A stretch of DNA of 64,000 bases from Macrostomum hystrix. Taxonomy: Eukaryota; Animalia; Platyhelminthes. Below, piece by piece: positions 19,480 through 52,573 of the stretch (the stretch's first letter is position 1; every line of letters starts with the position of its first letter). Below the pieces are notes generated by a model. The model was given only the letters and a program-made list of their open reading frames with translations, did no database searches and was not told the DNA's origin. The stretch lies in the NCBI GenBank assembly GCA_950097015.1, contig CATNEN010000009.1:1-64000 (forward strand). The letters are read 5' to 3'. The translations under genes and the position numbers were made by a program.

Positions 19480-20447
19480 GCGATCAACTGATGGGTGGTG
19501 TCACTCTGCTGCTGTCTGGAGACTTTAGACAGACGCTGCCTGTGATTCCGCGTGGCACTCCTGCTGATGAGATTAATTCTTGCCTAAAATCATCTCACCT
19601 GTGGCCATCGGTTGTGAAGTTGCACCTACGAACAAACATGAGAGCTACAATTCAAGGAGACGAAACAGCTCATGAGTTCTCTGCCAATCTATTGCGAATC
19701 GGCAATGGTCTGCTGGAGATTAGCACCGAGGATGGGCAGTCATCGATCGCTACAATCGGAACCATTGTGCAGTCAGTGCAGGAGCTCAAGGCAAAAGTTT
19801 ACCCGAACCTGATGGTTCGATATGCTGACGTTGACTGGCTGTCAGAGAGGGCAATTCTGTGTCCTAGAAATGATGCCGCCAACGAAATTAACTACCAACT
19901 GCTTCAGGAGTTGCCAGGTGCAGTTTTCACCTACAAGTCAATTGATACAACGTTGACTGATGACACCGCTGTGGAGTATCCTGTTGAGTTTCTGAACTCT
20001 CTAGATCCTCCTGGAACTCCATCGCACAACTTGCAGCTGAAAGTTGGGGCACCAATTATGCTCCTCCACAACCTGAATGCGCCAAGGCTGTGTAACGGCA
20101 CCAGACTGATAGTCAGGCGGCTCTTCCCACACGTGATTGAGGCCACGATAATGACTGGATCTGGCAGAGGAGAGTCTGTGTTCGTTCCCCGGATTCCAAT
20201 TATCCCCACGGACCTGCCATTTCAGTTCAAGCGACTGCAGTTCCCTGTGAGAGTGTGCTTTGCAATGACTATTAACAAGGCTCAGGGACAGTCGCTGAAG
20301 GTGGCTGGCATCAACCTGGAGACTCCTTGCTTCTCGCATGGGCAGCTTTATGTCGCCTGCTCCCGTGTTGGAACTCCAGCTGGCCTATTCATTTTCGCAC
20401 CAAGGGGAAGAACGAAGAATGTGGTGTATCCCCAGGCCTTGAGGTGA
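19480..20447 (+). pseudogene. PIF1-family helicase C-terminal half (Helitron RepHel)
   Basis: Motifs LLSGDFRQTLPVIPRG, RLCNGTRL, RLQFPVRVCFAMTINKAQGQSL and HGQLYVACSRV. The N-terminal half is deleted. Confidence 0.92.
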
Positions 20448-20599
20448 CTCGCAAGCAATTAATAGAAAAGTAGTCACGAATTGACCTTGACCTGTCTAAC
20501 TCTGAACTCTGAAACAGTTTAATTTTGTTTCTTTGACATTGTTATTGTTATGCCATGGCTATTTTCCTTATGTATACGCATGTACATGCATACTGTATA

Positions 20600-20873
20600 C
20601 AGAGGCAGATTTAGGGGGGGGGCGGAGGGGCAGTCGCCCCCCTAAATTTTAATCATGGGAATAAGATGCCCCCACCAGGGGCGCCAGTCGCAGCACTGGC
20701 GCCCCTTTTCGGCCGCTGGCGCCCCTTTTTCAGCCACTGGCTCCCGTTTTTCAGCCGCTGGCGCCCTTTCTTGGCTCCTGGCGCCCTTTTTCGGCCGCTG
20801 GCACCCCCTCTGTGATTCTCATGGCGCTCCCCTGACAGACCGCCCCAAAACAAAATTCCTGGATCTGCCACTG
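20600..20873. mobile_element. hAT-type MITE inside Helitron copy 1
   Basis: Imperfect TIRs CAGAGGCAGATTTAGG and CCTGGATCTGCCACTG with an 8-bp TSD ACTGTATA (20592-20599, 20874-20881). Confidence 0.9.
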
Positions 20874-21739
20874 ACTGTATAGAGGAGTGGCTAAGAGACA
20901 TGTTTCTAAAGAAGTAATCAAGAGGGGGTTGTTTGGACAAACTTTTCACTTATTTTTTACTTAAAACGCCCTTAAACAAACTCTTCACTTTTCATTAATG
21001 CAGTAAATAAATAAATGGTGACCTTCACTATAAAGTTAATACAGAGACGTGAATTGCTTACTGCTTTGCTTTAAATTTCTGCCCCAAAAACAATGGGCAA
21101 AAAAAGCTAGTACAATATTAACTTTCAAAGTGAAATTTGAGATTTTGTAGAAGAGGATTAGCAAATGCACTAGTAAATATTTTAGAATTATTTTATCATT
21201 TAATTATCAAAACAGGACTCAATTTGAAAAGTTGTCATGATCATACATGCACAACCTCCCAAATCTTAGCTGGCCATGCAACTTAGTTTTTGCTCTATTT
21301 ACGACTTAGTTTGCTCTCATTTGCTCTCTTTTTCTCTCCCTTTTTTCCTCCTCTTCACGCCTTCCTTTTTTGTCCCTTGGTCCCCCTTTGATTTTTTTGC
21401 GCTTGGTTGATTGGTTTTTGCAACTTACTTTGCTTGGCCCTCGTTTCACTTGGCTAGTTGGGCTAGGTTGGCTGGGTGTTGCACATGTATGGTCATGATA
21501 AAATTAAATGGCTACAATTAAATGGATACAATACATTTATTTAGCTAATTATTAAAACAATTATTAGTATTAAACTATTGCTTTTTTACCTAGAAATACA
21601 GAATATAATTCTGGTTCTATAATTTGTATATGAATTTAGTCTCTAAAGTTTTGGTCTATCTATAAATTTGTAGTCTTTATTACTTGAAGTTCATATTACT
21701 ATGGTTTATAGACTTATATTAGATATATTTATATTTCAG

Positions 21740-22990
21740 ATGTCTTCTCGTAAAAAACAAAAAATTTCCCGCTTTGGAATGGGACCTAGTACTGTAGCTG
21801 GTGAGTGGCTAGTACTCTGGTATAGAAGCAACAACTCCTACTCGCAGCCTCTTTACATTGGATCCTCTGTCTTTAAGCATCTTGATGATCAAGAAAAATC
21901 TTTACTTCGAAAAGGCAGCTCACTTCAAGTTAGAGAAGGAAAAAATCCAGTAGAATGTATAGTCATGCACCGTGGCTCAATTGACTCATGTGGGCAGGCC
22001 AGTATTCTGATTGATGACCTTGTTGAACATGGTAATAACACAGATGCCATACTAAGCAAGCTTGATAAACAGGAGAGTGGTGCACAACTGTCAGATCCAC
22101 TTGAATTGAATCCTGATATTGATGCTGAAGATACAGAAGAATGTGAGGAAGAAGGTGATGTAGTTGATGGATCCAGCTCTAGTGAGGAGGCTGAGGTTGC
22201 TCAAGAGAATTCTGGATTTGGACTACCATTTCGATCATCATCTTCGTCTGCTGCTTTTCAAAAAGAAATGCAAAAGTTTCGGTCATGCAGGAGGGCATTT
22301 GGATCTTCATCTTCACAACCAGCAAAAAAGAAGCTAAGAATGGACCATTTAACTAGTGCTGGCGCTTCTTCTATGCAGTATGTTAATCACACTGGCAGCA
22401 ACAGACCATCTTCTGCTTTAAGCCAGCATGTTGGTCAAAGCAGTCTAGTTATCCAGTCGTCTCCATCAGCACAGGGCAGTAGACTTTCTCCTTCTGTTGG
22501 CAGGCATGTGCGTGCTGGTCAGGAAGGCCTGCCAAATGTAGCATCACCATCAATGCTGAGCAAGTCTGACCAAGCAACTCTCCATATGCTGCTCGAGTCT
22601 AGGCTGCACACTTCTCTTCTCAAGAAGTTAGTCAAGTTGATTGAGGAGACGAATCAATTGCTTCGAAATCTGGGCGCTTCACGTTCTGAAGGTTTAAACC
22701 CAGATCGAATCGATTCTTTTATTTGCACGTTCGATGGAAAGCAGTGTAGCCTTTCCAGTCTGAATCTATCAAGCCCAAATTCTTTCGCTCGCGACTTCAT
22801 GCGGCGGCGATTTGGTACGGAGTATCTAAAGGACAAGATAATCGATCCCGATAAGACATCGAAGCGAGTAAAACTGCCTGATGCTGCACGAGAGGAAGTC
22901 ATCGCCGCTCTTGACAATTTCTGGGCCACAAATTACAGCTGGCGCTTGGTGAAGAGCTCATTGAATCAAATGTTTCGCGATCTGAAATAG
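21740..22990 (+). CDS. EnSpm accessory ORF with a probable C-terminal BEN domain
   Basis: Open ~416-aa frame inside the TIRs. The C-terminus SPNSFARDFMRRRFGTEYL...VKLPD...VKSSLNQMFRD fits the BEN pattern by eye. Confidence 0.65.
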   Translation: MSSRKKQKISRFGMGPSTVAGEWLVLWYRSNNSYSQPLYIGSSVFKHLDDQEKSLLRKGSSLQVREGKNPVECIVMHRGSIDSCGQASILIDDLVEHGNNTDAILSKLDKQESGAQLSDPLELNPDIDAEDTEECEEEGDVVDGSSSSEEAEVAQENSGFGLPFRSSSSSAAFQKEMQKFRSCRRAFGSSSSQPAKKKLRMDHLTSAGASSMQYVNHTGSNRPSSALSQHVGQSSLVIQSSPSAQGSRLSPSVGRHVRAGQEGLPNVASPSMLSKSDQATLHMLLESRLHTSLLKKLVKLIEETNQLLRNLGASRSEGLNPDRIDSFICTFDGKQCSLSSLNLSSPNSFARDFMRRRFGTEYLKDKIIDPDKTSKRVKLPDAAREEVIAALDNFWATNYSWRLVKSSLNQMFRDLK

Positions 22991-23360
22991 ATGTTACTGA
23001 GTCACAGACTGTATGATCATGGACTTTTAAGGCAATATTTTCGGGTTCATCGCAGTGTTCTCAAGTATAAAGGAGAAAACCACTCCGGTTTTCACTTGCT
23101 CATCTTTAGTAATCCTACAGTAGCTACAGAAAATGGTCAAGGTTTCTCTAAAAAACTATCAATTAAATTTAATAATTTTTTTGCTTTACTAAAAATATTT
23201 TTTGCCTTTGTTTTATTGTGACTGATGTTTGCGCTTGTTTCTTGCTTGTAAGTTGCACTAAAATGAAAATTCACAATTGGTATTTTATCTTTTGTATCTT
23301 GTAATTTTAATGTTTTCAAAATTAATAACAATATTGTAATGGTTACCCGAAAAGAAATAT

Positions 23361-25679
23361 GTGAAGATTCAATATTTCAGTTCGCAGTGCGTCATGTCTG
23401 AGGATGAGATTTTTTATTTGAACTCGGTGCTTGAGTCGATAGCCAACGATTTGTTTGATGATGAAACTATTTCTGAGGCTTCAACTCACAGTGCACCCGT
23501 CAATGGTGAGTCAATGTCTTCTAGAATGGACGACAGTGTGAAAGACGAGCAGGATCTGCCTGAACTAGCCATGGACTCAACTATCCTTGAGCTGCAAATC
23601 TCTAGCAGTTTCGAATCTCACTATGATAGAAATATTATCTATGCTGCCGCCGTTGTTCTAGTTATCGTTTCCTCTGGTCTTCCAGAGTCTCCAACATCTA
23701 CGGTGCTCAAAGTTCTTTGTGCTTTAAACATGGTGAACAGTGCTTTGTCCCTCAAACGTCTGAAATCAACCATCCGTCGCTCGATAGGTAACTTTAAAGC
23801 TATGTTTTCGCTTCGTTACTTTTGTTCGAATTCTGATTGTAACGCGATCTACACTTCTCTTAAGACCAAGTGTTGCCGTAGAAAGACAAACCATGTAGCC
23901 TACTTTTCTCTTCTTGAACAAATGAAACTAATTCTGCAAGCGCACCTGCCCACTATTCTCCTTTATCATACATTCTTGTCTTCTAATGACAATGGAGATA
24001 TTCTTTGTGGACGGTCCTTTTCTAGTGAGTATCTGGAATTGCATTTGTTATTTTCCAGTGACGGTGGTAACTTTTATTCAAACCAAAATTTTTCGTTTTG
24101 GCCATTCCAAGCTGTTCTTCTGGACCTACCTTTCCATATTCGCTGTAGGCTGGAGAATACACTAGTTTTAGCTATTTGGGCTGGTAGAAAGAAGCCAGAT
24201 TGGCAAATTTTCTTGGCCGACTTTTTGCGTACAATTAACTTCGATGAGCCTATTGTACTTAATGTAAAGGGAGCTGAAATATCAATTGTTCTTAGACTTT
24301 TCGCATGTGTATTTGACCTACCGGCCCAATGTAGTATTCTAAATGTCAAACAATTTAATGGTGAATATGGCTGTCTTTATTGTCGTGAACCTGGAATCCG
24401 GCATGGCAGATCTAATGTGTATCCCCACACATCTCCTCGCATATCTGATGCTGAATTTCGTGAATATGCTTATCTAGCTGAAAGTGCGAAGACAACACTG
24501 TTCGGTGTGAAAGGAATTTCAGTTCTTCAGGGCTATGTTTCAATCCCCAGTCATGTTTTACTGGATTCCTTGCATCTTCTTTACGAAAATTCATTTCATG
24601 TTTTGTTGTCAGCCTTGTTTGATACGCAGCATTGGAGAAAGCGTTACTATTTAGGAAGTGTGCGTCAGCTTGATTTAATTGATACAAACCTAGCATCAAT
24701 AAAACTTCCTTATCTATTTCCTTCATTGCGTCCCATTGCTGATCGAAAATTTTGGACTGGTTCCGATTCGAAAAATATTTTACTATACGCCATTTTTCCA
24801 TTGATAGTTCCTACACTTATACAGCGAAGTGAGTTCCGAGTAGCCTTTTTAATATCATCTTTTGTGGCTGCCGTTCGCTTGTTAAATCAAAGCTCTGCCC
24901 GTTCTAAGGCCCGTGAAATTGGCGAGATTTTAAATTATTTTGTTGACAATCTGGCTGTCTTTGACAACCCGAAAAATTACACTATTAATGTGCATTTATT
25001 AACTCATTTAGAGCAACAAGTAGCCCGCTATGGTGCGTTGCCTTATTGCTCCATGTTTTGCTTTGAAAATAGATTTTCTAATTTCAAGCGTTTTATTCAA
25101 GGTACGCGAGGTCATCTTTCTCAAATCGCACACAAAGTTTTGCTTAATAAGTTATGTAGGTCATTTTTAACATGTGCTGAATATCCAGAAAAGGACGTAA
25201 TCTGCGAGCTGCTAAATCTGAATTTAGATAGGAGTGTGGAAGAAAAGTGTTTCAAATTTTTATCACCGGGTCACGTCATTTTTAGTCGCAAAATTTATCA
25301 CAGCAATTGTTATACACGATTAGGGTCGCAAGAAAGCTGCATCTATTGCTTTTACCACCATGGTTTGCGTGCATTTGGAATCGCATTATCTTTTTTCCAA
25401 CAAGATGCTGATGTTTGTGCTAGGATGCAACTTTTCAAGACTAGGACCATCTCACTTACCAGTATGCTGTTTGCTAACTACCCTGCTGTTGTTACTGACC
25501 TGGAAAAGTCTATTTTTAGTCATTTAAATGATGCCTTTGTCTCTGTAAAGCTAACTGATAACATTATTCCAATTAATGTTAGTAAATTTATTTGCCCGTG
25601 TGTGACATTTTCCATACAATTTATGAACAAAAGCTATACAGTTGCCTCACCTCTGGACATCGTTGCCGAATATCATTAG
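23361..25679 (+). CDS. EnSpm/CACTA-type DDE transposase
   Basis: 772-aa ORF with FSSDGG...SFWP, VFDLPAQ...KQFNGEYGCLYC, DSLHLLYE and HLLTHLEQQVARYG...MFCFENR. Confidence 0.9.
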   Translation: MKIQYFSSQCVMSEDEIFYLNSVLESIANDLFDDETISEASTHSAPVNGESMSSRMDDSVKDEQDLPELAMDSTILELQISSSFESHYDRNIIYAAAVVLVIVSSGLPESPTSTVLKVLCALNMVNSALSLKRLKSTIRRSIGNFKAMFSLRYFCSNSDCNAIYTSLKTKCCRRKTNHVAYFSLLEQMKLILQAHLPTILLYHTFLSSNDNGDILCGRSFSSEYLELHLLFSSDGGNFYSNQNFSFWPFQAVLLDLPFHIRCRLENTLVLAIWAGRKKPDWQIFLADFLRTINFDEPIVLNVKGAEISIVLRLFACVFDLPAQCSILNVKQFNGEYGCLYCREPGIRHGRSNVYPHTSPRISDAEFREYAYLAESAKTTLFGVKGISVLQGYVSIPSHVLLDSLHLLYENSFHVLLSALFDTQHWRKRYYLGSVRQLDLIDTNLASIKLPYLFPSLRPIADRKFWTGSDSKNILLYAIFPLIVPTLIQRSEFRVAFLISSFVAAVRLLNQSSARSKAREIGEILNYFVDNLAVFDNPKNYTINVHLLTHLEQQVARYGALPYCSMFCFENRFSNFKRFIQGTRGHLSQIAHKVLLNKLCRSFLTCAEYPEKDVICELLNLNLDRSVEEKCFKFLSPGHVIFSRKIYHSNCYTRLGSQESCIYCFYHHGLRAFGIALSFFQQDADVCARMQLFKTRTISLTSMLFANYPAVVTDLEKSIFSHLNDAFVSVKLTDNIIPINVSKFICPCVTFSIQFMNKSYTVASPLDIVAEYH

Positions 25680-26942
25680 GTGATATTGAATAGTGAGCCC
25701 GGATAATGTATTTTTCAATCGCATTTATTCAAGTGATCCTGAAATTTTTGCCTTGGTAACATTATTTAAGACGTTTCATGGTTTCAAATTATCCCCAGTT
25801 ATTGTTCGTCCCCAGTCAGCAATTATAACAGTAGAGTTGTAAACTTTGTTTTTAATTTTTATGCGTGTGCGATTTTTCACATAAAGATACTTTTATAATA
25901 TAAACTACATCTAGTGGCTACATCTACATCTTATTTGCTTTTGGCCATGATTTGGATAAAAAAATACACACTTGTATTGTACTGGCTAATATCTTCTGTA
26001 TTTGCTTCTTGTTTTAACAAATTTATAGATTTAATAGATAAAAGCTCGTTCGTCTTCCATCATTTCCAAGCGATTTTCAGGTAACCTATGCGTCAATGGA
26101 ACTATAAAATGTCATCATTAGAACTATATTAATTAAGACGACTTGCTCACCATTGATGTCCTGCCACGAAGACTGTATATTATGATGTAATGGTTATTAG
26201 GCGTGGCAAAAAGTCTATTGCAATAAATTACATTAATGTATCAAAATTATAATTTCCTACTGGTGTCAATTACAAAAATTATAATAAAATTGTAAAAAAT
26301 TGCAAAAATTACAAGTTATTAAGGGGGTAATTAATTGTAAGAATTGCATAATAATTGCACAATTTGAAATCCAATTTTTCGCAATTTTTGCAATTTCGGT
26401 CAACTAGTGGTATTGAACAACCTCCGCGCGGATCGACACCTCCTCATTGAAGAGGCGTTGGCGGCTGTTGAACTCGGTCAGCGACGACCCACTCAGTTGG
26501 TCAACGACATTCAACGCCGTTTTGCAGATGTTGGGCTACAGGTGGACGACGCCATTGTTAAGGCACGTTTGATCGCCGCGCTTCCAACCAACATCAGGTG
26601 TGCTTTGGTCGCCCACGAGAGCAGCCCGTTAGATGTATTTGCCAAGATCGCCGATGGCATGGTCGCCGTAACCGGACGTCCTTCCCCTTTCGTGGATATT
26701 CAAAGCCTCTCATATGCGGACAACAACCGGAACAGCAGAGAGACTACCTCAGAAGAGCGATACAAGCGACAGCAGCAGCGTCCACTGATTTGTAATGCGC
26801 ATATTTTCTATGCCAGCAAGGCCCGCACATGCCGCCCATGGTGTCAGTGGCCAGGCAACAAACCAAAAACTGTATTGCGTCCTAGCCAATCGACCCCGGC
26901 TCACTCGCGTTCTGCTTCACCTCTCCCAAAAGCGTAAGTCAT

Positions 26943-29900
26943 GTGCAACGGCCGGGCCATGACGACAAGCAGGCCTCCACGCCACTTGTTGCCGCACAAG
27001 TTTTTGGTTCCGACATTAAATTCATCGTTGACACTGGCGCTGAGAGATCTCTGCTCCCTCCAAGTTTCGTTCCGCTCAACCTCATATCTCCCTGTAACGT
27101 CCGCCTCCGAGGAGTCAGCGGTCACGAAATTCATCTGCATGGTCAATCGTCGGTCACATTCTCCATTAATGGCCTGCGGCGTATGTTTCGTGTCGATTTC
27201 ATTATTGCTAACACGGCCCCTATACTCGGCTCGGATTTTTTGACTCAATACGAACTGCTTATCGACATGGGTTCCAGATGCATCCGCGACCCACTCACTT
27301 CCCTTTCCGCACCACTGTGTTTTGAACACACCAAAGGTTTTATACCTCCCTCTGTTCATGTTGTTGCTGCCGCACCAGTTAGTCACGTTCTATTGCCGTT
27401 TCCTGATCTAACGGCTTCGCCCGATTACTCAGTCCTTCCTGCAACGCCAGTGACTCATCAAATCATCACCACTGGAAAACCAGTATTCTGCAAACCTCGC
27501 CCACTGTCTCCTGCTAAGTATGCTGTTGCCAAAGCTGAATTTGACAAGCTCCTGCAAATGGGCATCGTTCGCCCGTCTTCTAGTCCGTGGGCCTCACCGC
27601 TCCACATGGTCAAGAAGCCCGACGGATCTTGGCGACCGTGTGGAGACTACCGCGCCCTTAACAGCGTAACAACTCCCGACCGATATCCGTTGCCTCATCT
27701 TCGACATTTTCATCACCACTTACGAGGCAGCAATGTTTTCAGCAAACTGGATCTTGTCAAGGCATACCACTTCATTCCTATGGCTGAGGAGGACATTGCC
27801 AAAACCGCGATTTGCACCCCTTTTGGATCCTTTGAATACACGAGGATGCCATTCGGCCTGCGGAACTCCGGCAGTACATTTCAACGGTTCATCGACTCCC
27901 TTTTCCGTGGTCTGGATTGTGCAATCACGTATGTTGACGACGTCCTGATCCACAGCAAATCGGAGGAGGAGCACCACAGGGATGTGGAATCCGTTTTACA
28001 GAGACTGCGCCATGAAGGCTTGCGAGTAAATCCTGAAAAATGTCAATTTTTTCAAAAGGAAATTGAATTCCTCGGTCACCTAATCTCTGCCCAAGGCATT
28101 CAACCAATTCCATCTCGTCTAGACGCACTTCGCAAACTCTCACCTCCGCGCGATTTCAAGAGTCTACAGAGAATACTGGGTATGTTTGGTTTCTATCAAC
28201 GTCACATTCCAAACTACGCCCACATTATTCAACCTCTTCGATCATTGAGTGATGACTCCTACGAGTGGACTGCTCACCACGATGCAGCTTTCCAGAAACT
28301 TAAGGATAGTTTATCCTCCGCTGTTACCCTCGCCTTTCCTGATCCTACAGCTACTTTCACCATAACGTCCGACGCCAGTTCTTTTGCGATTGGTGCCAGT
28401 CTTCATCAGGTAGTTGAAGGAAACTCCTCACCGATAGCGTTTTTCTCACGTAAGCTAACAACTACCGAATGCTCATACAGCGCCTTCGACCGTGAGCTCC
28501 TGGCTGTGTTCGCTGCAGTAAAAACCTGGCGCCATCACATTCATGGTCATCCGACAACTGTGTTTTGCGACCACAAACCACTGATAGGCGCGTTCCATAG
28601 TACCAAAGAACGCCTCTCGGATCGACAGCAACGCCAATTATCCACCATCACGGAATACGTCACGGAAATTGTACATATCCCGGGCACCAAAAACGTCGTT
28701 GCTGACACTCTGTCCCGCGATGTCACCGATACATACGGCGTCAATGTCATTGAAGACGCAGACAACCCAATCATTCAACTACCTGCCGACCTCCCGGCAA
28801 TCGCGCGAGCACAAAAAGAAATGGGAATAACTGGTGACCAGTTTAGTCCTTTTGACATTGGTCTACTTGACTGTCCACTCTACTGCGAGACGTCACAACC
28901 CAATCCTCGCCCTTTCGTTCCGGAGAGTCTACGTCGGCAGATCGTCCTAGCTCTTCACGAAATTTCACATGCTGGAGTCAAGGCCACACTACGCCTAGTT
29001 GCCCATCGTTTTTTTGGCCATGTATGAAATCCGACGTACAGAATTGGACAGCTTCATGTCTCCAGTGCCAAGCCGCCAAAGTTGGGCGCCACATTCAACG
29101 CCCACTTCATTTCCTACCGTGCCCCACACAGCGTTTTACGACTGTCCACATGGATTTAGTGGGACCACTTCCACCTCCGGAGCCCGACGACTTATCAACA
29201 CCGCAGCCCCGCTACCTTCTTACCGTAATAGATTCATTTACTCGCTGGATTGAAGCCGTTCCGCTGCAAACCATTTCGGCTGCTGCAGTCGCACGTGCTT
29301 TTGTCGACCATTGGGTCTGTCGCTTTGGACCACCATTAACCCTGGTTACTGATCAAGGGACACAGTTTCGCTCAGAGCTGATGGCCGACCTGGTGACCCT
29401 TCTCGGTGTTCACCACATCCGCACCTCAGCTTACAATCCGAAAGCTAACGGAATGATAGAACGCTCTCATCGCTCTCTCAAAGCCAGTCTTCGCGCACGA
29501 GGTCGTTCATGGCTATCTCAACTGAACGTCGTTCTTTTTGGTCTGCGCATTCATCCGGATGACACCGGTAACTCTCCCTTTTCTACCGTAACCGGCGAAC
29601 AACCACTTGTTCCGCCAGTCGTTACTGACGATTCCAACAATCGAAAACTCGCACAAAGCCTTCACAGTTTATTCTTCCCGTACCGACTGCCACGGACGCA
29701 GCATCGACCAGTTCACCTTCCGTCCGCTCTATCAACCTGTGAATTTGCTTGGCTTCGATTAGATCGCGTGAGAAAACCATTGGAAGCACCATATCAGGGC
29801 CCTTTCAAGGTCGTCCACCGTTCCGCTGACACAATGACCCTGGATATCAAGGGCAAACCTCAAGTGGTATCAATCGAACGCATCAAACCGGCACGTCTGC

Positions 29901-30028
29901 CAAATCCTGCACCCCAGACGCGCTCAATGACCAATTCAAACCCTGTTATAAGCCCAGTTTTTCAAGTGCAACAACGCCCCATAAAACGCGTCCATTTTAA
30001 TGACAATGTAACTGTTCTTACTCGTTGA
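26943..30028 (+). pseudogene. Gypsy B pol (PR-RT-RH-IN) with one frameshift
   Basis: Motifs IVDTGAE, YVDD, TSDASS and integrase VHMDLVG/TDQG/IERSH. A 1-nt shift falls in the T run near 29010-29020. Confidence 0.93.
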
Positions 30029-30291
30029 GGGGGGAGTGTTTGTAGCGTCTAAAACGAACTTTTATTTCAGACTTAGTTACGACTCTAACTTTCTTTTATT
30101 TCCATAGACAACCCCACTTGTTCCACCAAGAATACTAGGATACTAGCCTTCCCTTTTTCCCATAGATTAACTGTACCAGCTCAATTAAATAAAGCCGACC
30201 ACGGGGGCCAAGGCTCCCCTTCTTAACCCTGCTAAGAGAAATACAAGTTCACCGCCTTAGCTTAATTTGTTTTGGCTAAGAGCCACAACCT

Positions 30292-32021
30292 AATTTCTCC
30301 ACCAAAATCGCCCCACTGAATGACCTTCGAAAGGGAAGCTCGCCCTTCGTCTGGTCCGACGAGTGCGCTCACGCATTTGAGGGGCTCAAGCGAGAAATAT
30401 CATCCAGGCCTGTGGTGCAGCCATATAGCCTCGAAAAAGAGGCCACTCTCACCACTGACGCCTCCAAAGGTGCGCTTGCTGCTGTTTTGACCCAGGACGG
30501 GCACCCCGTGATTTACATCTCCAGGACTCTCTCATCCGCAGAAGCCAACTACTCAAACATCGAACGAGAGGCACTGGCGATTTTCTGGGCAATCCATAGG
30601 CTTAAACACTATCTGCAGGCCGAAAATTCACCATTCGGACTGATCACCAACCGTTGCTTCGCCTCTTTGGTGGCAGCATTCCATTGAGCACCTCTTCCAG
30701 AATCAGCCGATGGGCGCTGTTTCTAATGCAATTCGATTTAACCCTGGAATACGTACAAGGGACAAAAATTCCGCATGCCGACGCGCTCTCCCGACTCCGG
30801 TTCGAAAACGCTGATCTTGAACCTAGCAGCACCTTTTGGGCGGTAAACTGCGTTGCCTTTGAATCCCCAACCATTGATCCACACAGAATAGCATCCGAAA
30901 TCGATTCAGACGGCCTCCTTCAACGAATAGTTCGCCGCATTCGGTCTGGTGACTGGCGAGGGTGCACACAAGCAGAGGCAGCCTTTAAGAAAGTCGCGGA
31001 ATGCCTGACTCTCGAGAATGGCCTGATCTACATGCGCCGCCGAGCATTCATTCCACCAAGGCTCAGACGAGAGGCCTTCGACGCAGTGCATGACACTCAT
31101 ACGGGTTCCAACGCAGCCCACAAGTTGCTTGCACAGATCTGTTGGTGGCCCGGCATGCAGAGAGATGTGGAGCAATTTGTTTCTCAATGCCGAACATGTA
31201 CTCAGTTAAGACCTCGTCTGCAAAAAACTCGGGACACTTGGCCACCTGCCACCGCTCCATTTCAAAGAGTGCACATGGACTGGGCTTTTGTACCAGCCGT
31301 TGGCAACATTCTCATCGTGGTTGATGCGTACTCGGGCTGGATAGAAGCTTTCCCCACAAAGGACAGATCAGCAGACAGTGTCATCAACTCGTTGCGAACA
31401 GTTTTTACTCGCTTTGGTGTTCCGGAGCTAGTTGTTTCGGACAACGCAGCGGAGTTCACCTCGGCTCCACTATTGGCCTGGTTGGAAAGGAACGGTGCTC
31501 GTAAGATGGAGAGCCCTCCATACTCCCCTCAATCTAATGGTGCAGCCGAGCGAGCCGTCCAGACAATCAAGAAGGCCTTGCAGGCATGGACCCAGCGTCT
31601 AACACATGGCAGCTTTGTCGCTTTTTTGCAGAAGGCTCTGCTACATCATCGCAATTCTTCAACTTCACGCGGACGAACACCTGCCGAGCTCGTGCTAGGA
31701 CGGCGACTTCGAGTTCCGGTGGTCTGCACCTTCCAGCAGGGCGACCCGGTGCAGTTCAAGGCAAACGGCGACACCACCAGCTCTCGAGCTGAGTTCCTGA
31801 TGTCGCAGGGGCGCAACACCTCCTGGCTACTGACGGGCGCCAAACTACAACTGGCCTCAAACAATCAATTGGGCCCGCTGGTTCCTGCCTCTGAGACCGA
31901 TGAGGAGGAAGAAGCAGTTCACCAACAACCACAAGCCAATATGCCTGAGTTTCCCCCGGAGATCGCTCCGACAAGAAGAAGCACTAGGGTGAGGAATCCC
32001 CCAAATCGCTTTGTGCCGTAG
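30292..32021 (+). pseudogene. Gypsy A RNase H-integrase (3' part of pol)
   Basis: TTDASK, NYSNIEREALA, HDTH...CRTC, VHMDW, SDNAAEF and AERAV. A 1-nt frameshift falls near 30618. Confidence 0.92.
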
Positions 32022-32143
32022 GCTCAGACTGAGTAAACTATGATCGCGTCATTTCACTGACTTTGCGAAGTCTATTAACTAGTTCTTAAAGTTTGTTTGT
32101 TTGACTGGACGTTACCCATTGTCTTCCTTTGCAGATGGGGACA

Positions 32144-32358
32144 TGTGGTAGTGGCTGCTAGCTAGAGCTAGCGTTGTTGCACTTTTCCCGATAATATCCT
32201 TGTAATGTCTATGGTCTCTAATTCTCAACCTGCTATAGGTTCCTAAGCTTTCGTTCCCAGCCTCTCACTTATGTTATAATCTCTTTGCTTGAATAAACGC
32301 TATGCTACGTACACAACGTTAACGCAAAAGCACCAACAGCTTCATCCAAACTACGACA
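32144..32358 (+). repeat. 3' LTR of Gypsy A
   Basis: Matches 14896-15110 except at 2 positions. Confidence 0.97.
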
Positions 32359-32589
32359 AGTAAATAGAGTCAGTCTCAACCGACAATTATTTTCCAAAAT
32401 TATAAAATCATGCTCTAAGTGAAATCTCAGGGTAAGATCTCATAATGAGATTAAGGTGAGATAAAAGACATATGCATGTTAGGTATAGACATATGCATAG
32501 GCAATCTCAGCCTAAGATATATATACTTTACATATGAGGGGCGAATCAGGGAACTTGAGGGGCGAATCGGGCCTACTGGGAAACGCCCC

Positions 32590-32992
32590 TCGATTTGGGA
32601 AAAGCGCCTCTAACCTCCGTGGGATCCACGCCTCATATCCCTAACCCCTGGCCTCGGAATCCTCCTAAGTCCTAACCCATTTTTTCTCCCATTTGTTAAT
32701 TTTTTACCCCTGCTCAACTCCCATTTGTTAATTGTAACCCCTACCCTCTTTTTATTCGCTCCCGACCCTCGCGCCCATCTTTTTAATATAAATTTATTAT
32801 TATATATACAAATATACCCGCCACACCTTAGACTCTTCACTTAACTAGCTCTTGATAAAGGCAAACCCGCCGAAACGCGTCGAGCATTTTAAAACCAAAA
32901 ATTCCGCCTGTCTCCTCTTAGACTTTTTTTATTAAGCAGTCGACCGGAACCGGATCGGTTCCTAACTCCTAACCCTAACCCTACCCTAACCC
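32590..32992 (+). mobile_element. 5'-truncated Penelope-like pseudo-LTR fragment ending in telomeric repeats
   Basis: C/T-rich segment, then a hammerhead motif, then CCTAACTCCTAACCCTAACCCTACCCTAACCC (32961-32992). It is homologous to the reverse strand of 45750-45840. Confidence 0.7.
32848..32885 (+). ncRNA. Minimal type I hammerhead ribozyme motif (U3-A8 variant)
   Basis: GCTC-TTGATAA-A-GGC(AAACCC)GCC-GAAACGCGTC-GAGC: stem I GCTC/GAGC, a 3-bp stem II and palindromic stem III ACGCGT. Confidence 0.75.
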
Positions 32993-33199
32993 ATGATTCT
33001 GTCTCCAATAACTACTTGGTTACTACCGCAACCGCAGTGATGGCGTGAGGACTGGTTGGGGTTGGGGTTTATTCTTTCTAGCAATCACGCGGTTGGCTGG
33101 CTGTCCAGCGAACCAGGATCGCCCGCTCGCCCGCCCGCCCCGCTAAATGCTCGATATATAGTAGGTTCGCCAAGTATGCTAGTATGAAATTTACAAACA

Positions 33200-35845
33200 A
33201 TGTCGAGAAGCCACCATTCTAAAGACCCTAAAGAGTGTGCAATCTGCGAGCAGAAGATGAGGCATGACAACCTCATTCGGCACGTCAAAATCGTACACAA
33301 AGAATACGTTCACAGGCTTGACGACCTGAGATGGTATTCTCTGTTTGCGAGTTGTGTAAGCAAAAATGGAGTCATGTGCGGAGTGAAAACATGCTTTGAA
33401 GTACGACTTCATATTCGTGATCATTATCGCTCCCATCATGGCATTCATTCTGCTGACCAGACATACAACAAGTCCGAGCACATGAAGTTGCTTCGTGAAT
33501 TTGCCCTCGCATACCTTGATTCCGCAAAGTCTGCCCTAAAGATGGACAGGCCATTGCCCCCACATCCTTCGACGTGGAAGCGATTTGAAGGCCGAGTTAC
33601 AACACCTGAAGTCGGCATGGTAAGTATTTTATATGTTTTCTGTTTATTTTATGCTAATTAGTTGTTAGAATACCATTTAGCATTTAGCAAACAAAACCAG
33701 TCCATAGCACAAAACACAGATAAATAATATCTTAGCTGTTTGAGCCATTTACTTAGTATTTTTACTATGGCTATTAGTAATTTTTTTAATTTTGTAAATA
33801 CAGATTTGTTTCTTATATTAGGAATCGTAAAGTAATTTCCTAATTGTGCAGAAGGACGGGTAGAGTAAGGATATGGAGAGAGGTAAAGTGATTAGAGAGA
33901 GTAATAGAGTAAGGGGATGGAGACAGGAAGGGTGAGGATAATGAGAGCGGGTAGAGTGGGGAGAGGTAGGGTGATCAGAAGAAAATGGGTGGGAAGTAGG
34001 GAGCGATTATTAGGGAATAGTAAAGTGAGCAGACTGAGAGGGGAAATAAATGAGGAGAAATGGGTGAGTAGAGTATGAAAAGAGAGGGGTGAGTAGGGAG
34101 AGAAATATGGGTATAGTGGGGAGAGAGTGAGAGGTAGATTGAAGAAGTAGAATCTTGGAGTCAGCGGAGAGAGTTGGGTAGAGTGAGAAAAGAGAGGCGG
34201 TTGGCGAGGCGTAGAGTAAAGAGTGATGTATATATGTAGAGTGACGAGTTGGTAGACAAGTAGAGTGACAGAATAAAAAGAAATCCTGTGAGGAGATGGA
34301 GACGAAAGTAGTGGTGATAATGAGAGGGGTAGAATTTGGAGAGAGGAGGCGATAAAATAAGAACAAAATCTGAAAAGTTTGTTCATTAGTTCACCTGCCA
34401 ATATGTGCGACTTTTGGCACACTGAAAGATGGAGCTATTATGAATTGATTTTGTCGGATTATATGGCCATTACTGTGTACAAGAGTTGCTTTCTGTTTTA
34501 TATTCTGATAGTGAGAGGCAAACTATTACCTAGCAGCCTGTGATTAAAAGTGTTGCCATATTTAATCACTTAACTCTTAATCACTTAACACATAGCAAAT
34601 GTGTTACTTTTGGCAGATGTGAAGTACTGTATGTTTAAGCTCAAAAAGGCAAAAAATTTTGTGTTATTTTAACGGTTATAGTGACCCTTCATACAGTTTG
34701 CTTTTTAATAATTATTTTTCGTAATGAATACTTTCAGTTGGAAAATATTATTACTGAGGTTTTTAGGAAAATCTGAGAAAAAATAAAAACAAATCATTTA
34801 TTGTTCCTGCGTGAATGTTACTGTGCAAATAAATATTATAGGTGTATTGCTGTATATTTTAGGCTCATACGTTCTTCTCACTCTCTTTTTTCTCAGGCTC
34901 GGCGCTTTAGGGAAGTACTTCCGGAGCCAAAGGCGAGTTCGACAACGTGCACGGATGCAACTGAAGAACCAGAACTGGCTGAACAACATGTGAGTTACCA
35001 AGCGGGTTTTTTTCGTCAATTCGGAGTGGCTTTGGGCGGAGCTGATTTGGGCGGGTTTACATCACGCAGAGATTTTGGGCGAAGGGAGCTTAGGCGGAGG
35101 TCTCTACTAGGAGGGTGAACTCACGGCAAGTGACTTCAGGCGGAGTGAATTCAGGCGGAGTGACTTCAGGCGGAGTGACTTCAGGCGGAGTGACTTCAGG
35201 CGGAGTGACTTCAGGCGGAGTGACTTTAGGCGAAGGGGCTCCTTTTGGAGTGGCTTTGGGCGGAGTTGATTTGGGGCGGGTTCACCTCACGCGAAGTAAT
35301 TTTGGGTGAAGTGATTTTAGGCGGATTGTCTTTATTCAGAGAGTGAACTCGCGGCGATCGATCGAGTGACTTCAGGCAGAGTGACTTAAGGCGGAGTGCC
35401 TTTATTCGTAGCTGCTTTGGTCTTTATGCGGTTTACCTCACGCAGAGATTTTGGGCGGAGGGAGCTTAGGAGCGGCTTTGGCCGGAGCTGATTTGGGCAG
35501 GTTTACCTCTTTATCTTACAGATCCTTACCTTACAGATAGATAAGGCTAGACAGACATACAGATGGAGATAAACGTACAGACAGATAGGGATGGACAGAC
35601 AGACTGATAGGCAGACAGAGAGATAGAGATAGACAGAGAGAGATACACAGGCAGACAGATAGGCAGACAGATAGGCAGAGAGATAGATAGGGATAGACAG
35701 ATATACGGACAGATAGAGATAGACAGATAGAAACATTATTAGTATTGAAAAACACTTACTGATCATTAACATCTTTAAAATTATCCTGAAATACTATTTC
35801 TTGTTTGTTCCTTCACAGCTGGATGTATCGAAGTACTGCGTGTGA
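33200..35845 (+). CDS. Putative spliced C2H2 zinc-finger protein of unknown function (exons 33200-33619, 34897-34989, 35819-35845)
   Basis: Contains CAICEQKMRHDNLIRHVKIVH. Phase-0 GTAAGT and GTGAGT donors pair with pyrimidine-rich CAG acceptors. The downstream exons are uncertain. Confidence 0.45.
33850..34370. repeat. Purine-rich (GA) low-complexity tract
   Basis: Strong G/A strand bias; the ORFs here are compositional artefacts. Confidence 0.8.
35130..35234. repeat. 15-bp minisatellite GTGACTTCAGGCGGA, 7 copies, with degenerate flanking copies across 35020-35500
   Basis: Tandem copies visible directly. Confidence 0.92.
35540..35730. repeat. Compound (GACA/GATA)n microsatellite
   Basis: Visible directly. 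Confidence 0.85.
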
Positions 35846-40252: not shown

Positions 40253-41454
40253 TCTTATGATAAATTGGCATAGGCCCCGGGTGTCAAAATTGCTGTAATG
40301 TGCGTTCCATTTCGAAAAATCGAATTTTCCAACACTAATGCAGCTGCTCATCAGATGCAGAATAGTATTGGGTACAATTCGTCTCTGTACATCAAAAAAA
40401 TTTGCAAGACCGTTTTTACAAGATTTACCTTTATAGGTTCGAAAAATTGCATGATTTTTTTCATTTCTACGAAAACAACACGTTTTCCAACTGCAAATCA
40501 AGCTTTAGCATCTTGAATGTGACGCTGACTTTAAGTTGACATGTCATTCTCTTTCAAACATCCACATGCGTCTATTGACACCATTTGCAGTTCAATACGA
40601 CAAAGTGCACTATCGTAGGGGCAGAAATGGCATACTTTTTCTCTCATACGTACACCTGTACAGGTACATATCTTAGTACAGATGGCCAACTACTGAATGT
40701 GTGTACACGAGTCTAGTATCAAATGAAAGAGGGTCTTAAATGCAACGGTAAGCGCAACACCAACGGATGCAGTAATCAAAAGTTATGACTGATCCTGTTT
40801 TGCATGTTTTAGCCCCCCCGGGGGTCAAAATTTGGGATTTTCGCATCCACCATCGAGGCAAGTGGATGATTAGAAAATTCGAGATATAAATTTTGTGCGC
40901 ACATCTGTTGCGCTTCTAAAAACTGAATCGAATCACACACCAAATACGTTCTGGCCATGCAGTTTTGTACCTCGAAAAATGACAAAAAATGACCAACATC
41001 ACGTTTTTAGGATTTAATTACCCACATCTTCGGTAAACAACATTCAATTGCCATGGCAACGATTTTCACATCAGTGCATAGACCCGAGTATTTTACATGT
41101 TTTGCAAAAAACGCATCCAAATCGGTTCAACTGGGCAAAAGCGGCAATCGTTAAAAGTTGAAAAACGTGCTTTTCTATCCCGACACGTTTCTACGTCTTA
41201 TCAAGATGAGATATCGCATCCGTAATGCGATATCGCAAGCCGAGCGTAAGCGAGGCTTTCTCTTGGTCATTACTGGCTCACTCATCACAACTAGATTTTC
41301 TTCGTTCCTCTGTTTTTTAAGGCTGTCAAGCCTAATTTTTAAAGAGATTTTCTCGACAACAGACTAAGACAGTAAAAACGCATCATGAGTTCTGACTCTG
41401 AAATAGATTCTGCGTTAGATTCACCCATTGTAACCGACGATGAATCTGCTAGCG

Positions 41455-42094
41455 ACCTCTATCTACACCAAACTCACCAGCTCTCTCCTTCTCCTTCACA
41501 AAAAATCTTCTCATCCCGCTCACACCTTCAAAGGGGTCCTCAAATCCCAAATCCTTAGGGCCGCCCGCCTCTGCGATTCCTATCCGGACTTCTCCGCCTT
41601 CTGCCGGACTCTCCGCCTCAACCTCCGCTCTAGTGGATACACCGCTACTTTCTTTAATTCTGTTAAACACTCTATCCTCTCCTCTTTGGACTGGCCCCAG
41701 TCTATCCCCCGCCCAATTCTAATTCCCAAGGGTTTTCGCCCCTGCAATTCTCCCCGCTGTAGGACCTGCCCCCACTCTGCCCCCACAACCTCATTTCGGG
41801 GACCCAAACCTGCTTCCGACTTCCTCATCACCCAATCCCTCTCCTGTGACTCGGTTCACATCATTTACGGGATCACCTGCACCCGTTGCCTACCCTCAGC
41901 CCTTATCTACGTAGGATGCACCATCAACACCCTTAGGGACCGTCTGAATGGCCATCGCTCGGACATCAGACTAAAGAAGGAAAAACCCGTGGCCCTCCAC
42001 TTTAGTTCCCAAAACCATTCGATTGCCGACCTCAAAATCGCAGCAATCGAAGCCCTACCTGAGGCTACCCCCCTTCAACCCAAGGAATCGACTG
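41455..42094 (+). pseudogene. Penelope-like element fragment: RT thumb, Zn knuckle and GIY-YIG endonuclease; truncated at both ends
   Basis: TSIYTK...SSHP...SQILRAARLC...SGY, then CNSPRCRTC, then IIYGITC...IYVGCT...LRDRLNGHRSDI...VALHF. It stops before the PxGLN motif. Confidence 0.88.
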
Positions 42095-42099
42095 TAATA

Positions 42100-42780
42100 C
42101 ATTTAATCGACTGACTAGTAACTTCAGCTACACCTTTAAGATGACTAGAGATGATCGCAGTAGAGTGTTGTGGACTGGGGCGGACCACACTAGGATGGAA
42201 GTGAAGCTAACCGGAATCGAGCTGTATTTGGAAGTCATTGAGCCAAAGACCGCACTAAAAGCAGATTATCTCAAGGCAATAGAGAAGGACATTGTGTCGC
42301 CTACACGGCCTACATGTGTCGAGATGAGCGAAACGAAACCAGAACAAACATCTGCATTAAAGAGGGATCATGCAGCAATCCAAGGTATATTATTATTAAC
42401 CTGAGAAACCCAAATAACATTATACGATACATGCATGGAGATGTGCGGTCCATTCAGCATGAAATCAGTGATAAACTTTACCCTGCACTGCCACAAAATG
42501 GAAATTTCAGTCAGAACAAGATTAGCAAATTTTACAGCGAGTTGGTCGACTTGGCTGTGAAAGAGAACAATGGAATTGCTATCACTGCTCTTCAATATGG
42601 AACTCAACGATGTTTGGCGCTGATGTGTCTGCCAGACAAATGCCTACTGATAACAGCCCTGTGAATATCGTGACTAACATTGAGAGGACTGCCGCAACTG
42701 CTGTTGACCTGCACATTATCTATGCGTTCGAGAGGAAGGTGAAGCTTAACATGATCAACAATTCATCCAGTAAAGTTTAA
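42100..42780 (+). pseudogene. Polinton/adintovirus-like major capsid protein, C-terminal part, two frameshifts
   Basis: VKLTGIELYLEVIEP, NPRYIIINL and SPVNIVTNI...LHIIYAFERKVKL resemble Polinton MCP C-terminal motifs. It lies directly upstream of a penton-like ORF. Confidence 0.55.
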
Positions 42781-52504: not shown

Positions 52505-52573
52505 ATCCCTAAGTTTTTCGTTCGGCTTCTTCATTTGCGGTTACGTCGTCAGCTACCCGGATTCTACTCTAGT

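What the first reader, a model, noticed from the sequence alone, without database searches (positions are those of the whole stretch)
32590..32992. Hammerhead-bearing pseudo-LTR ending in (CCCTAA) repeats: candidate telomere-primed retrocopy marking a former chromosome end
Seen: on the C-rich telomeric strand, a possible ORF C-terminus (GKSASNLRGIHASYP*) is followed by a C/T-rich UTR, a hammerhead motif (32848-32885) and, 76 bp later, CCTAACTCCTAACCCTAACCCTACCCTAACCC. Established: PLE pseudo-LTRs carry minimal hammerheads, and endonuclease-deficient Athena/terminon PLEs prime on telomeric G-overhangs through C-rich repeats, leaving this polarity. Inference: a PLE family in a TTAGGG animal couples to telomeric repeats, and the subtelomere may have grown outward by such additions. 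If the family is the GIY-YIG-bearing one seen nearby, that combination would be unusual. No RT core is present in the window, so the family link is unproven.
Basis: partly seen in the sequence, partly recalled or inferred. Interest (0 to 1): 0.8.

Follow-up and report, generated by a model that had tools for sequence, protein, structure and literature searches.

The report
Telomere-tailed hammerhead retroelement stub
A 314-bp non-coding retroelement copy with a Penelope-type hammerhead ribozyme and a tail of telomere repeats marks a spot where this animal's chromosome once ended. Its small family sits almost only at chromosome ends, like rotifer Athena elements, but I found no reverse transcriptase of its own.

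Summary
The hammerhead (32848-32885) and the C-strand telomeric tract (32961-32992) are real. The "ORF C-terminus" is not: the open frame is only 42 codons. Rfam finds nothing, but a model built from 10 genomic copies shows a Penelope-type minimal type-I hammerhead with covarying helix II.

The exact 14-mer GAAACGCGTCGAGC occurs 11 times in the 220-Mb genome, and every copy is followed within about 110 nt by CCTAACC-type repeats. Of 19 hammerheads of this class, 16 lie within 55 kb of four contig ends. The 13 of these with telomeric tails all point their tails at the centromere. None of 25 dispersed EN+ Penelope hammerheads has such a tail.

The units are 0.3-0.5 kb, non-coding and variably 5'-truncated, and they stack head to tail. 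The window holds a 30-nt B-type stub (32650-32678) followed by a truncated A-type unit (32679-32992). A paralogous contig loses homology exactly at 32992/32993, which fits a healed chromosome end.

I found no endonuclease-free Penelope RT; every PLE RT I could check to its C-terminus carries GIY-YIG. Best reading: non-autonomous, Athena/Terminon-like telomere-attaching retroelements. The pseudo-LTR idea and the link to the nearby GIY-YIG fragment are unsupported.

The scan found this family before on two other pieces of the same genome, with the same conclusion.

The parts
207..6773 (+). Present telomeric array, (CCCTAA) about 1095 copies. It sets the polarity reference. 206 nt of non-telomeric DNA lie distal to it.
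32650..32678 (+). 30-nt 5'-truncated stub of a B-type unit: only its 3' tail, ...GGCCTCGGAATCCTCCTAAGTCCTAACCC. It is preceded by a CCCTAACCCC remnant at about 32639-32648.
   Evidence: 93-100% match to the tails of B units at C7, C14 and C41; sequence
32679..32992 (+). A-type unit, 314 bp, non-coding, 5'-truncated. Fuller A/D-type copies reach about 450-505 bp.
   Evidence: 98.7% to L005:4342-4651 (C41 end), 84-92% to copies at C7 and C3; the copies have different 5' ends and flanks
32848..32885 (+). Minimal type-I hammerhead. Helix I is GCUC/GAGC. The core is UUGAUAA (U3/A8 instead of C3/G8) with an extra A before G10.1. Helix II is GGC/GCC. The ACGCGU palindrome serves as helix III. The predicted cleavage site is after GUC (32881).
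   Evidence: defining features from PMC4209133
32886..32960 (+). 75-nt spacer between the hammerhead and the tail. A 7-bp hairpin (GGAACCG/CGGUUCC) sits just before the tail.
32961..32992 (+). Element-encoded C-strand telomeric tail. The variant repeat CCTAACT is shared by A- and D-type copies. The tail is predicted to be unpaired.
32993..35470 (+). Proximal flank. Homology to the paralog on contig C23 starts exactly at 32992/32993, and C23 lacks the unit and the tract.
52461..52607 (+). Second unit (C-type) 3' module: canonical-core hammerhead at 52465-52504 (CUGAAGA), a 69-nt spacer, and the tail at 52574-52607. The 5' boundary of the unit is not defined.
   Evidence: The same flank is capped by an A-type unit at C3:5.559 Mb.
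45755..45801 (-). Degenerate hammerhead of the same class (CUGAACA core, AGCGCU helix III). It is inverted and has no telomeric tail. It lies in a 3.6-kb block duplicated in the C7 subtelomere.
14895..32359 (+). Context: an LTR retrotransposon (217-bp LTRs, 5-bp target-site duplication AGTAA) with nested TEs, inserted later into 144-bp satellite. This explains most of the distance to today's telomere.
41440..42114 (+). Context: a 5'-truncated EN+ Penelope-like fragment (RT thumb plus weak GIY-YIG). It is not linked to the telomeric units.

Best explanation
Window 32679-32992 is a 5'-truncated copy of a short, non-coding, non-autonomous retroelement. It sits behind a 30-nt stub of a second unit type.

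Inferred mechanism:
1. The element's RNA ends in C-strand telomere repeats. These lie about 10-110 nt (usually 60-110) downstream of a Penelope-type minimal hammerhead.
2. The single-stranded CCCUAA-like tail anneals to the G-rich 3' overhang of a chromosome end.
3. A Penelope-like reverse transcriptase supplied in trans extends that 3'-OH and copies the RNA. Copying often stops early, which gives the 5' truncations.
4. Telomerase then re-caps the new end.

Repeated rounds build head-to-tail stacks with every tail pointing to the centromere. The window copy was added to a telomere that had healed a break at 32992/32993. Satellites and a 17.5-kb LTR retrotransposon later separated it from today's telomere.

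Shown: the anatomy, the copy distribution, the polarity, the truncation pattern, the covariation and the breakpoint. Inferred: the RNA intermediate, overhang priming, the source of the RT, and the role of the hammerhead. That role could be a 3' fold recognised by the RT, or dimer-dependent processing of read-through transcripts.
For: (1) Hammerhead. It meets all four Penelope min-HHR hallmarks listed in PMC4209133:
- covariation;
- an extra nucleotide between A9 and G10.1;
- an invariant G10.1-C11.1 pair;
- a palindromic helix III, ACGCGU or AGCGCU.
The A-type core has the paired change C3U+G8A. Cofolding predicts the helix-III dimer, at -22.7 kcal/mol against 2 x -8.5 for monomers.

(2) Tails. 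15 of 19 hammerheads of this class have a telomeric tail. None of 25 dispersed EN+ PLE hammerheads has one.

(3) Location and polarity. 16 of 19 lie within 55 kb of four contig ends (C9, C14, C7, C41). That zone is about 2% of the genome. All 13 tailed copies there have the tail toward the centromere.

(4) Copy number. BLAST of three stacked units finds only 16 places: those four ends, a cluster at C3:5.55 Mb and a stub on C10.

(5) Truncation pattern. The 3' ends are constant and the 5' ends variable. The C41 stack has five units. One starts inside the hammerhead and one about 45 nt before it. The window has a 30-nt stub.

(6) Templated tails. Unit-specific variant repeats (CCTAACT, CCTAAGT) are conserved within unit types, so the tail is part of the element.

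(7) Shared module. At least three unrelated bodies (A/D, B, C) carry the same hammerhead-spacer-tail module.

(8) Independent insertions. The window copy and the C41 copy are 98.7% identical but differ in 5' end and in both flanks.

(9) Former end. Homology to the C23 paralog stops exactly at the tract. Paralogous flanks carry different units.

(10) Literature. Athena, Coprina and Terminons attach to G-overhangs through reverse-complement telomeric repeats just downstream of a hammerhead, and form 5'-truncated head-to-tail arrays (PMC8557442; PMC6431247).
Against: - No RNA evidence. The runs that hold the region are kept only as contigs of unknown or DNA kind.
- I found no endonuclease-free PLE RT in the assembly, so the enzyme is unidentified.
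- Some copies clearly spread by segmental duplication rather than retrotransposition: window 52.5-55 kb against the C3 loci, and window 44.3-47.9 kb against C7.
- Three hammerheads of the class near ends are inverted and tail-less, or have only a decayed tail.
- Only four contig ends carry the family, and the copy number is low (about 20).
- The spacer between hammerhead and tail is usually 60-110 nt, not 'immediately adjacent' as described for Terminons.
- The genome-wide model search scored only 150 of about 116,000 first-look candidates, so the counts are lower bounds.
- The telomeric arrays at C9, C14 and C7 are not at the very contig ends.
Confidence: 0.75

Rival explanations
1. It is the 3' end (pseudo-LTR) of an autonomous endonuclease-deficient Penelope-like element, or of a giant Terminon. 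The RT-bearing body would lie elsewhere, or be missing from the assembly.
For: - The hammerhead-plus-telomeric-tail module is the signature of Athena and Terminons.
- ORFs between 15 and 32 kb all lie on the + strand.
- Terminons carry GIY-YIG-like ORFs and captured genes (my recollection of the abstract of Arkhipova et al. 2017, which was not held here).
- Subtelomeres are hard to assemble, so a master copy could be missing.
Against: - The profile and single-protein searches for PLE RT found only internal loci, or GIY-YIG-bearing or truncated copies.
- The units have recurrent 5' starts directly after the previous unit's tail, and no ORF.
- The co-oriented ORFs belong to one LTR retrotransposon with a target-site duplication plus nested TEs.
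- The two intervals between tracts share only a Helitron fragment.
Confidence: 0.12
2. It is a subtelomeric repeat, like the yeast Y' element, spread between ends only by recombination or break-induced replication. The interstitial telomere tracts would be relics of that process, and the hammerhead an inherited passenger from an old Penelope insertion.
For: - Blocks of several kb are shared between subtelomeres and with the C3 interstitial locus at 88-98% identity.
- The family has few copies and sits at only four ends.
Against: Recombination does not explain:
- graded 5' truncations with fixed 3' ends;
- unrelated bodies sharing one 3' module;
- element-specific variant repeats in the tails;
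- covariation that keeps helix II and the C3-G8/U3-A8 pair;
- near-identical copies with different neighbours on both sides.
Confidence: 0.1
3. It is a chance juxtaposition of a hammerhead-like string and a short interstitial telomeric sequence.
For: Rfam finds no hammerhead. The A-type core departs from the CUGANGA consensus.
Against: All 11 exact-core copies carry the tail. There is covariation. Enrichment at contig ends is about 40-fold.
Confidence: 0.01

Closest known systems
Athena elements and Terminons of bdelloid rotifers (EN-deficient Penelope-like elements)
   Same: - A minimal type-I hammerhead near the 3' end, followed by reverse-complement telomeric repeats.
- Attachment polarity, 5'-truncated copies, and head-to-tail arrays next to telomeres with other sequences in between.
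   Different: - The units here are 0.3-0.5 kb with no ORF, and I found no EN-free RT anywhere in the assembly.
- The tail is (CCCTAA)-type rather than (ACACCC) or (TCACCC).
- A spacer of about 10-110 nt (usually 60-110) separates hammerhead and tail.
Coprina (EN-deficient PLEs of fungi, protists and plants)
   Same: Telomere association, and a hammerhead plus telomeric-complement 3' end.
   Different: - Coprina encode RT.
- Their hammerheads are monomer-stable or canonical variants (PMC4209133). These are the metazoan minimal, dimer-type variant.
Animal non-LTR retrozymes (non-autonomous hammerhead elements derived from PLE terminal repeats)
   Same: Short, non-coding, with a type-I hammerhead, and thought to borrow PLE RT.
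   Different: - Retrozymes are tandem repeats delimited by hammerheads and give circular RNAs.
- These units are not tandem monomers. They end in telomere repeats and are confined to chromosome ends.
- Circular RNA was not tested.
EN+ Penelope-like elements of this same genome, including the family that ends in (TATC)n
   Same: - The same hammerhead hallmarks (GAAACGCGUC, an extra base after A9).
- One family has the same layout: hammerhead, 78-nt spacer, tandem-repeat tail.
   Different: - They encode RT plus GIY-YIG.
- They are dispersed in both orientations.
- None of the 25 checked has a telomeric tail.
HeT-A/TART (Drosophila) and SART/TRAS (Bombyx) telomeric non-LTR retrotransposons
   Same: Head-to-tail, uniformly oriented, 5'-truncated retroelement arrays at chromosome ends (own knowledge; PMC5537684 is listed).
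   Different: - Those are LINE-type, with poly(A) or endonuclease-targeted insertion.
- They have no hammerhead and no telomere-complementary tail.

Membership tests
Penelope-type minimal type-I hammerhead (Cervera & De la Pena 2014) | Conserved core CUGANGA...GAAA...UH, with helix I open (type I) | tested here: met
   The B, C and D types have CUGAAGA, GAAA and GUC or CUC. The A type (the window copy) has UUGAUAA, that is the paired change C3U+G8A. I have not shown that the A type is active.
Penelope-type minimal type-I hammerhead (Cervera & De la Pena 2014) | [quoted passage not shown] | tested here: met
   An A is present in all 10 aligned copies. The feature is listed in PMC4209133.
Penelope-type minimal type-I hammerhead (Cervera & De la Pena 2014) | A conserved G10.1-C11.1 pair, and covariation in helix II | tested here: met
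   G-C in 8 of 8 distinct rows. Four of 5 helix II pairs change on both sides. 0 of 500 shuffles reach the covariation score.
Penelope-type minimal type-I hammerhead (Cervera & De la Pena 2014) | A very short, palindromic helix III that allows a dimeric active form | tested here: met
   ACGCGU or AGCGCU. Cofolding gives an intermolecular 6-bp helix III. Cleavage itself cannot be tested here.
Any Rfam hammerhead family | Reaches the family gathering score | tested here: not met
   No hit even at E<=10. These minimal variants fall outside the Rfam models.
EN-deficient PLE (Athena/Coprina) or Terminon | Encodes a PLE-clade RT without GIY-YIG, often with an ORF1 | tested here: not met
   The units have no ORF. 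The genome searches gave only EN+ or truncated PLE RTs, none at a telomere.
EN-deficient PLE (Athena/Coprina) or Terminon | A short reverse-complement telomeric repeat stretch downstream of the 3' hammerhead | tested here: met
   15 of 19 hammerheads of the class. The spacer is about 10-110 nt.
EN-deficient PLE (Athena/Coprina) or Terminon | Location at or near telomeres, uniform polarity, 5'-truncated head-to-tail arrays | tested here: met
PLE pseudo-LTR | A direct repeat formed by a partial tandem copy flanking an RT ORF | tested here: not met
   No RT ORF lies between or beside the units. The neighbouring units are of different types.
Non-LTR retrozyme | Tandem monomers bounded by hammerheads, yielding circular RNA | tested here: inconclusive
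   The stacks hold hammerheads 300-520 nt apart, but of different unit types with telomeric tracts between them. No RNA data were usable.

The most novel reading that the evidence does not exclude
In this genome the 3'-terminal tandem-repeat tail alone may set where a Penelope-like RNA is copied. The same kind of module (minimal hammerhead, spacer, repeat tail) ends in (TATC)n in an EN+ family that lives inside TATC microsatellites, and in (CCCTAA)n in these RT-less units at chromosome ends.

If so, ordinary GIY-YIG-bearing Penelope RTs mobilise telomere-tailed parasite RNAs onto G-overhangs, with no dedicated Athena-type enzyme. Telomere attachment would then be a swappable RNA property, not a trait of the EN-deficient RT clades.
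Probability: 0.3. Interest if true: 0.75.

Novelty: new variant of a known kind. Interest (0 to 1): 0.55.

Why it matters
Telomere-attaching Penelope-like elements are the closest retroelement relatives of telomerase. In animals they are described only from bdelloid rotifers, as RT-encoding Athena elements and Terminons.

Here the same 3' signature occurs in an animal with TTAGGG telomeres, on short non-coding units, in a genome where every detectable PLE RT that could be checked has an endonuclease. Two readings follow:
- Telomere attachment may depend mainly on the RNA's tail and fold, and can be parasitised in trans.
- Alternatively, an unassembled Athena-like master exists outside rotifers.

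Either would widen the known range of this mechanism. It also offers a simple test system: a small RNA, a known overhang and candidate RTs.

For genome annotation, the units are reliable markers of present and former chromosome ends.

Tried and rejected
- **Rfam.** Gathering thresholds on the whole window, and E<=10 on both loci, gave no hammerhead.
- **ORF reading of 32590-32644.** Rejected: the frame is open for only 42 codons.
- **An RT upstream of the units.**
  - The window ORFs are Gypsy/LTR, Helitron Pif1 and a transposase.
  - The 4.1-kb element upstream of the C7 and C41 stacks is the end of a Maverick/Polinton, with rve plus chromodomain and pPolB nearby.
- **An EN-free PLE RT.**
  - I searched with an EN+ RT query, the TATC-family RT and a 3-sequence RT profile.
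  - All hits were internal, or EN+, or truncated.
  - The TATC-family ORF2 looked EN-free in a whole-protein Pfam scan. Its C-terminal 199 aa alone hits GIY-YIG above the cut-off.
- **The giant Terminon reading of 6.8-33 kb and 33-52.6 kb.** Rejected. The two intervals share only a Helitron fragment, and 14895-32359 is one LTR element with a target-site duplication.
- **Expression.**
  - All eight runs are coded contigs of DNA or unknown kind.
  - One 142-nt contig in run X6 spans a B-type hammerhead to its tail, but I cannot call it RNA.
  - Read laying skipped 32961-32995 as a repeat.
- **Folding of the 3' modules.** The tail is unpaired in 5 of 5 folds, but no fold beats the shuffles (z from -1.75 to +0.5).
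- **Papers.** Gladyshev & Arkhipova 2007 and Arkhipova et al. 2017 are not held. I used the review PMC6431247 and Craig et al. 2021 instead.
- **Organism.** The name is coded and I did not pursue it. An earlier agent called the animal flatworm-like; I did not test that.

Full report
**1. What is there**

The window is the left end of contig C9 of a 220-Mb, 42-contig animal genome. A (CCCTAA)n array of about 1095 repeats lies at 207-6773. At 32848-32885 the + strand reads GCTC TTGATAA A GGC-AAACCC-GCC GAAAC GC GTC GAGC. A 75-nt spacer follows, and then CCTAACTCCTAACCCTAACCCTACCCTAACCC at 32961-32992.

I do not accept it as an ORF end.

Rfam finds no hammerhead at its gathering scores, nor at E<=10 around either locus.

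**2. Is the hammerhead real?**

The 14-mer GAAACGCGTCGAGC occurs 11 times in the genome, against 6 for the reversed control. I aligned ten full motifs.

- Helix I (GCUC/GAGC), the GAAA, the ACGCGU palindrome and the GUC are invariant.
- Helix II is GGC/GCC, GAUC/GAUC, GGGAA/UUCCC or GGCUG/CAGCC.
- Four of 5 helix II pairs change on both sides.
- 92% of cells pair, against 19-35% when partners are slid.
- 0 of 500 shuffles reach the covariation score.

[quoted passage not shown] All four are met.

The window copy and its three closest relatives have UUGAUAA instead of CUGAAGA. C3 and G8 are changed together to U and A. From my own knowledge, C3 and G8 pair in the active fold, so this looks compensatory. 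I have not shown that it is active.

Cofolding two copies gives the intermolecular 6-bp helix III expected for dimer-type hammerheads, at -22.7 kcal/mol against 2 x -8.5.

**3. The family**

A covariance model built from the ten motifs was run over the genome and over the fetched loci. The genome run scored only 150 of about 116,000 first-look candidates, so the counts are lower bounds. Two classes appear.

Class 1 has helix I GCUC/GAGC and helix III ACGCGU or AGCGCU. It has 19 motifs:
- 13 lie near the ends of C9 (+ strand), C14 (+), C7 (-) and C41 (-). The tail of each points to the centromere.
- 2 lie in a cluster at C3:5.55 Mb.
- 3 lie near ends but are inverted and degenerate. Two of them are one duplicated block.
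- 1 lies at C11:4.74 Mb and is followed by a 16-bp minisatellite.

Class 2 is several dispersed families in both orientations. They lie about 240 bp downstream of GIY-YIG ORFs, so they are ordinary EN+ Penelope-like elements.

Telomeric repeats follow 15 of the 19 class 1 motifs and none of 25 class 2 motifs. The zone within 55 kb of the 84 contig ends is about 2% of the genome, yet it holds 16 of the 19.

BLAST of three stacked units against the genome finds 16 places only: the same four ends, the C3 cluster, and a 100-nt stub with a 58-nt tract on C10.

**4. Anatomy of the units**

At the C41 end, reading inward from the telomere, five units lie head to tail:
- a B-type unit that starts about 45 nt before its hammerhead;
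- a full B (527 bp);
- a D (405 bp);
- an A (350 bp);
- a B that starts inside the hammerhead.

Each ends in 7-27 nt of telomeric repeat. The tails carry type-specific variants: CCTAACT in A and D, CCTAAGT in B. The tail is therefore copied from the element and is not just leftover telomere.

A/D, B and C have unrelated bodies but the same module of hammerhead, spacer and tail. None has an ORF.

In the window:
- 32650-32678 is a 30-nt B-tail stub.
- 32679-32992 is an A unit lacking its first 40-190 nt.
- This A unit is 98.7% identical to the C41 A copy, but differs from it in 5' end and in both neighbours. The two are therefore separate insertions.

Constant 3' ends with graded 5' truncation is the usual mark of reverse transcription that starts at the 3' end.

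**5. Former chromosome end**

A 12.2-kb contig, C23, is a paralog of window 32992-35470. Homology stops exactly at 32992/32993, and C23 continues with unrelated DNA. There is no target-site duplication, and no homology resumes on the distal side. That fits a break healed by telomere addition and then extended by units. It does not fit an internal insertion.

The flank of the second tract (52608 onward) has two paralogs at C3. One is capped by the same C-type tail and the other by an A-type unit. So the same end sequence was capped more than once.

Most of the 26 kb now distal to the A unit is not retro-added:
- 7.8-14.9 kb is 138-, 178- and 144-bp satellite.
- 14895-32359 is one LTR retrotransposon with 217-bp LTRs and the 5-bp target-site duplication AGTAA. 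It was inserted into the 144-bp satellite and holds nested Helitron, Gypsy and transposase ORFs.

This explains the run of + strand ORFs and argues against a giant Terminon unit. The two inter-tract intervals share only a Helitron fragment.

**6. Who supplies the RT?**

- The ORFs directly upstream of the C7 and C41 stacks belong to a Maverick/Polinton, with rve plus chromodomain and pPolB nearby.
- A full EN+ PLE (713 aa, RVT_1 plus GIY-YIG) and a 3-sequence RT profile retrieve about 100 PLE RT pieces.
- None is at a telomere. The only one in the window is the RT-thumb/GIY-YIG stub at 41440-42114.
- A second family has ORF1 plus ORF2 and lies in TATC microsatellites. It first looked EN-free, but its C-terminal 199 aa hits GIY-YIG above the cut-off.

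So I found no Athena- or Coprina-type RT, as two earlier agents also reported for other pieces of this genome. The RT is therefore unidentified. It may be an EN+ PLE RT acting in trans, or a master copy missing from the assembly.

**7. Comparison with what is known**

Craig et al. 2021 (PMC8557442) and Arkhipova & Yushenova 2019 (PMC6431247) describe Athena, Coprina and Terminons. These attach to G-overhangs through reverse-complement telomeric repeats placed just downstream of a 3' hammerhead. Their copies are 5'-truncated by telomeric repeats and form head-to-tail arrays.

The present family works like that and shares the defining 3' anatomy. It fails the defining coding feature, an EN-free PLE RT, so I do not file it as Athena or Terminon.

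It is closest in concept to a non-autonomous derivative. Animal retrozymes are now proposed to be such derivatives of PLEs. But these units are telomere-tailed and end-restricted, not tandem.

**8. Limits**

- There is no RNA evidence. Every run holding the region is stored as contigs of DNA or unknown kind, and read laying skipped 32961-32995 as a repeat.
- The organism is coded.
- I examined only four contig ends in full.
- The arrays at C9, C14 and C7 have 0.2-2.4 kb of non-telomeric DNA beyond them. This may be an assembly artefact or real terminal additions.

**9. Verdict**

The element is a non-autonomous variant of a known mechanism, in a host where that mechanism had not been described as far as the papers I could read go. 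This scan had already found it at two other ends of the same genome.

Noticed in passing
L040:442-7719 (C37:3.204-3.212 Mb); also L039, L042: An EN+ Penelope-like family with ORF1 plus ORF2 (RT and GIY-YIG). Its 3' end is a minimal hammerhead, a 78-nt spacer and then a perfect (TATC)623 array. L039 has three hammerheads, each followed by kb-long TATC arrays. I cannot tell whether this is microsatellite-targeted insertion or RT-made repeats.
   Followed up: partly
window 14895-32359: A 17.5-kb LTR retrotransposon (217-bp LTRs, target-site duplication AGTAA) inserted into 144-bp satellite. It carries nested Helitron Pif1, a DUF1258-type transposase and a Gypsy element, all on the + strand.
   Followed up: partly
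window 54236-54300: A 37-bp insert containing CCTAACCCTAACCCTAGCCC, flanked by a 23-bp direct repeat (GGAAATTTTTGTTTCCATACTAA). It is absent from both C3 paralogs of this block. It is an interstitial telomeric insertion with a long duplication.
   Followed up: partly
window 1-206 and 6774-6805; L004:1-1871; L032:754-3169: Non-telomeric DNA lies distal to the kb-long telomeric arrays at three contig ends. In the window, a short inverted (TTAGGG)5 directly abuts the inner end of the (CCCTAA)n array. This could be an assembly artefact or real terminal structure.
   Followed up: partly
L005:5820-9965 (C41 right end) and L002:5380-9523 plus L031 (C7): A Maverick/Polinton (pPolB 1404 aa, rve plus chromodomain integrase). 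At C41 it is cut off directly by the telomere. A 99.5% identical copy lies 30 kb inside the C7 end.
   Followed up: partly
L049:4960-5095 (C10:2,246,560-2,246,695): An interstitial B-type tail of about 100 nt that starts just after the hammerhead position, plus a 58-nt (CCCTAA)-type tract, 2.2 Mb inside a contig.
   Followed up: no
L007:1300-1470 (C11:4.737 Mb, - strand): A hammerhead of the telomeric class, followed not by telomere repeats but by a 16-bp minisatellite (TATCTATCCACTAGTA)n. A PLE RT fragment with 39% identity to the TATC family lies 4.5 kb away on the other strand.
   Followed up: no
window 44346-47923 against L002:2-3540: A 3.6-kb block shared at 97.8% between the C9 and C7 subtelomeres, in the same orientation relative to the telomere. 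It contains a Tc1/mariner HTH ORF and the degenerate inverted hammerhead.
   Followed up: partly
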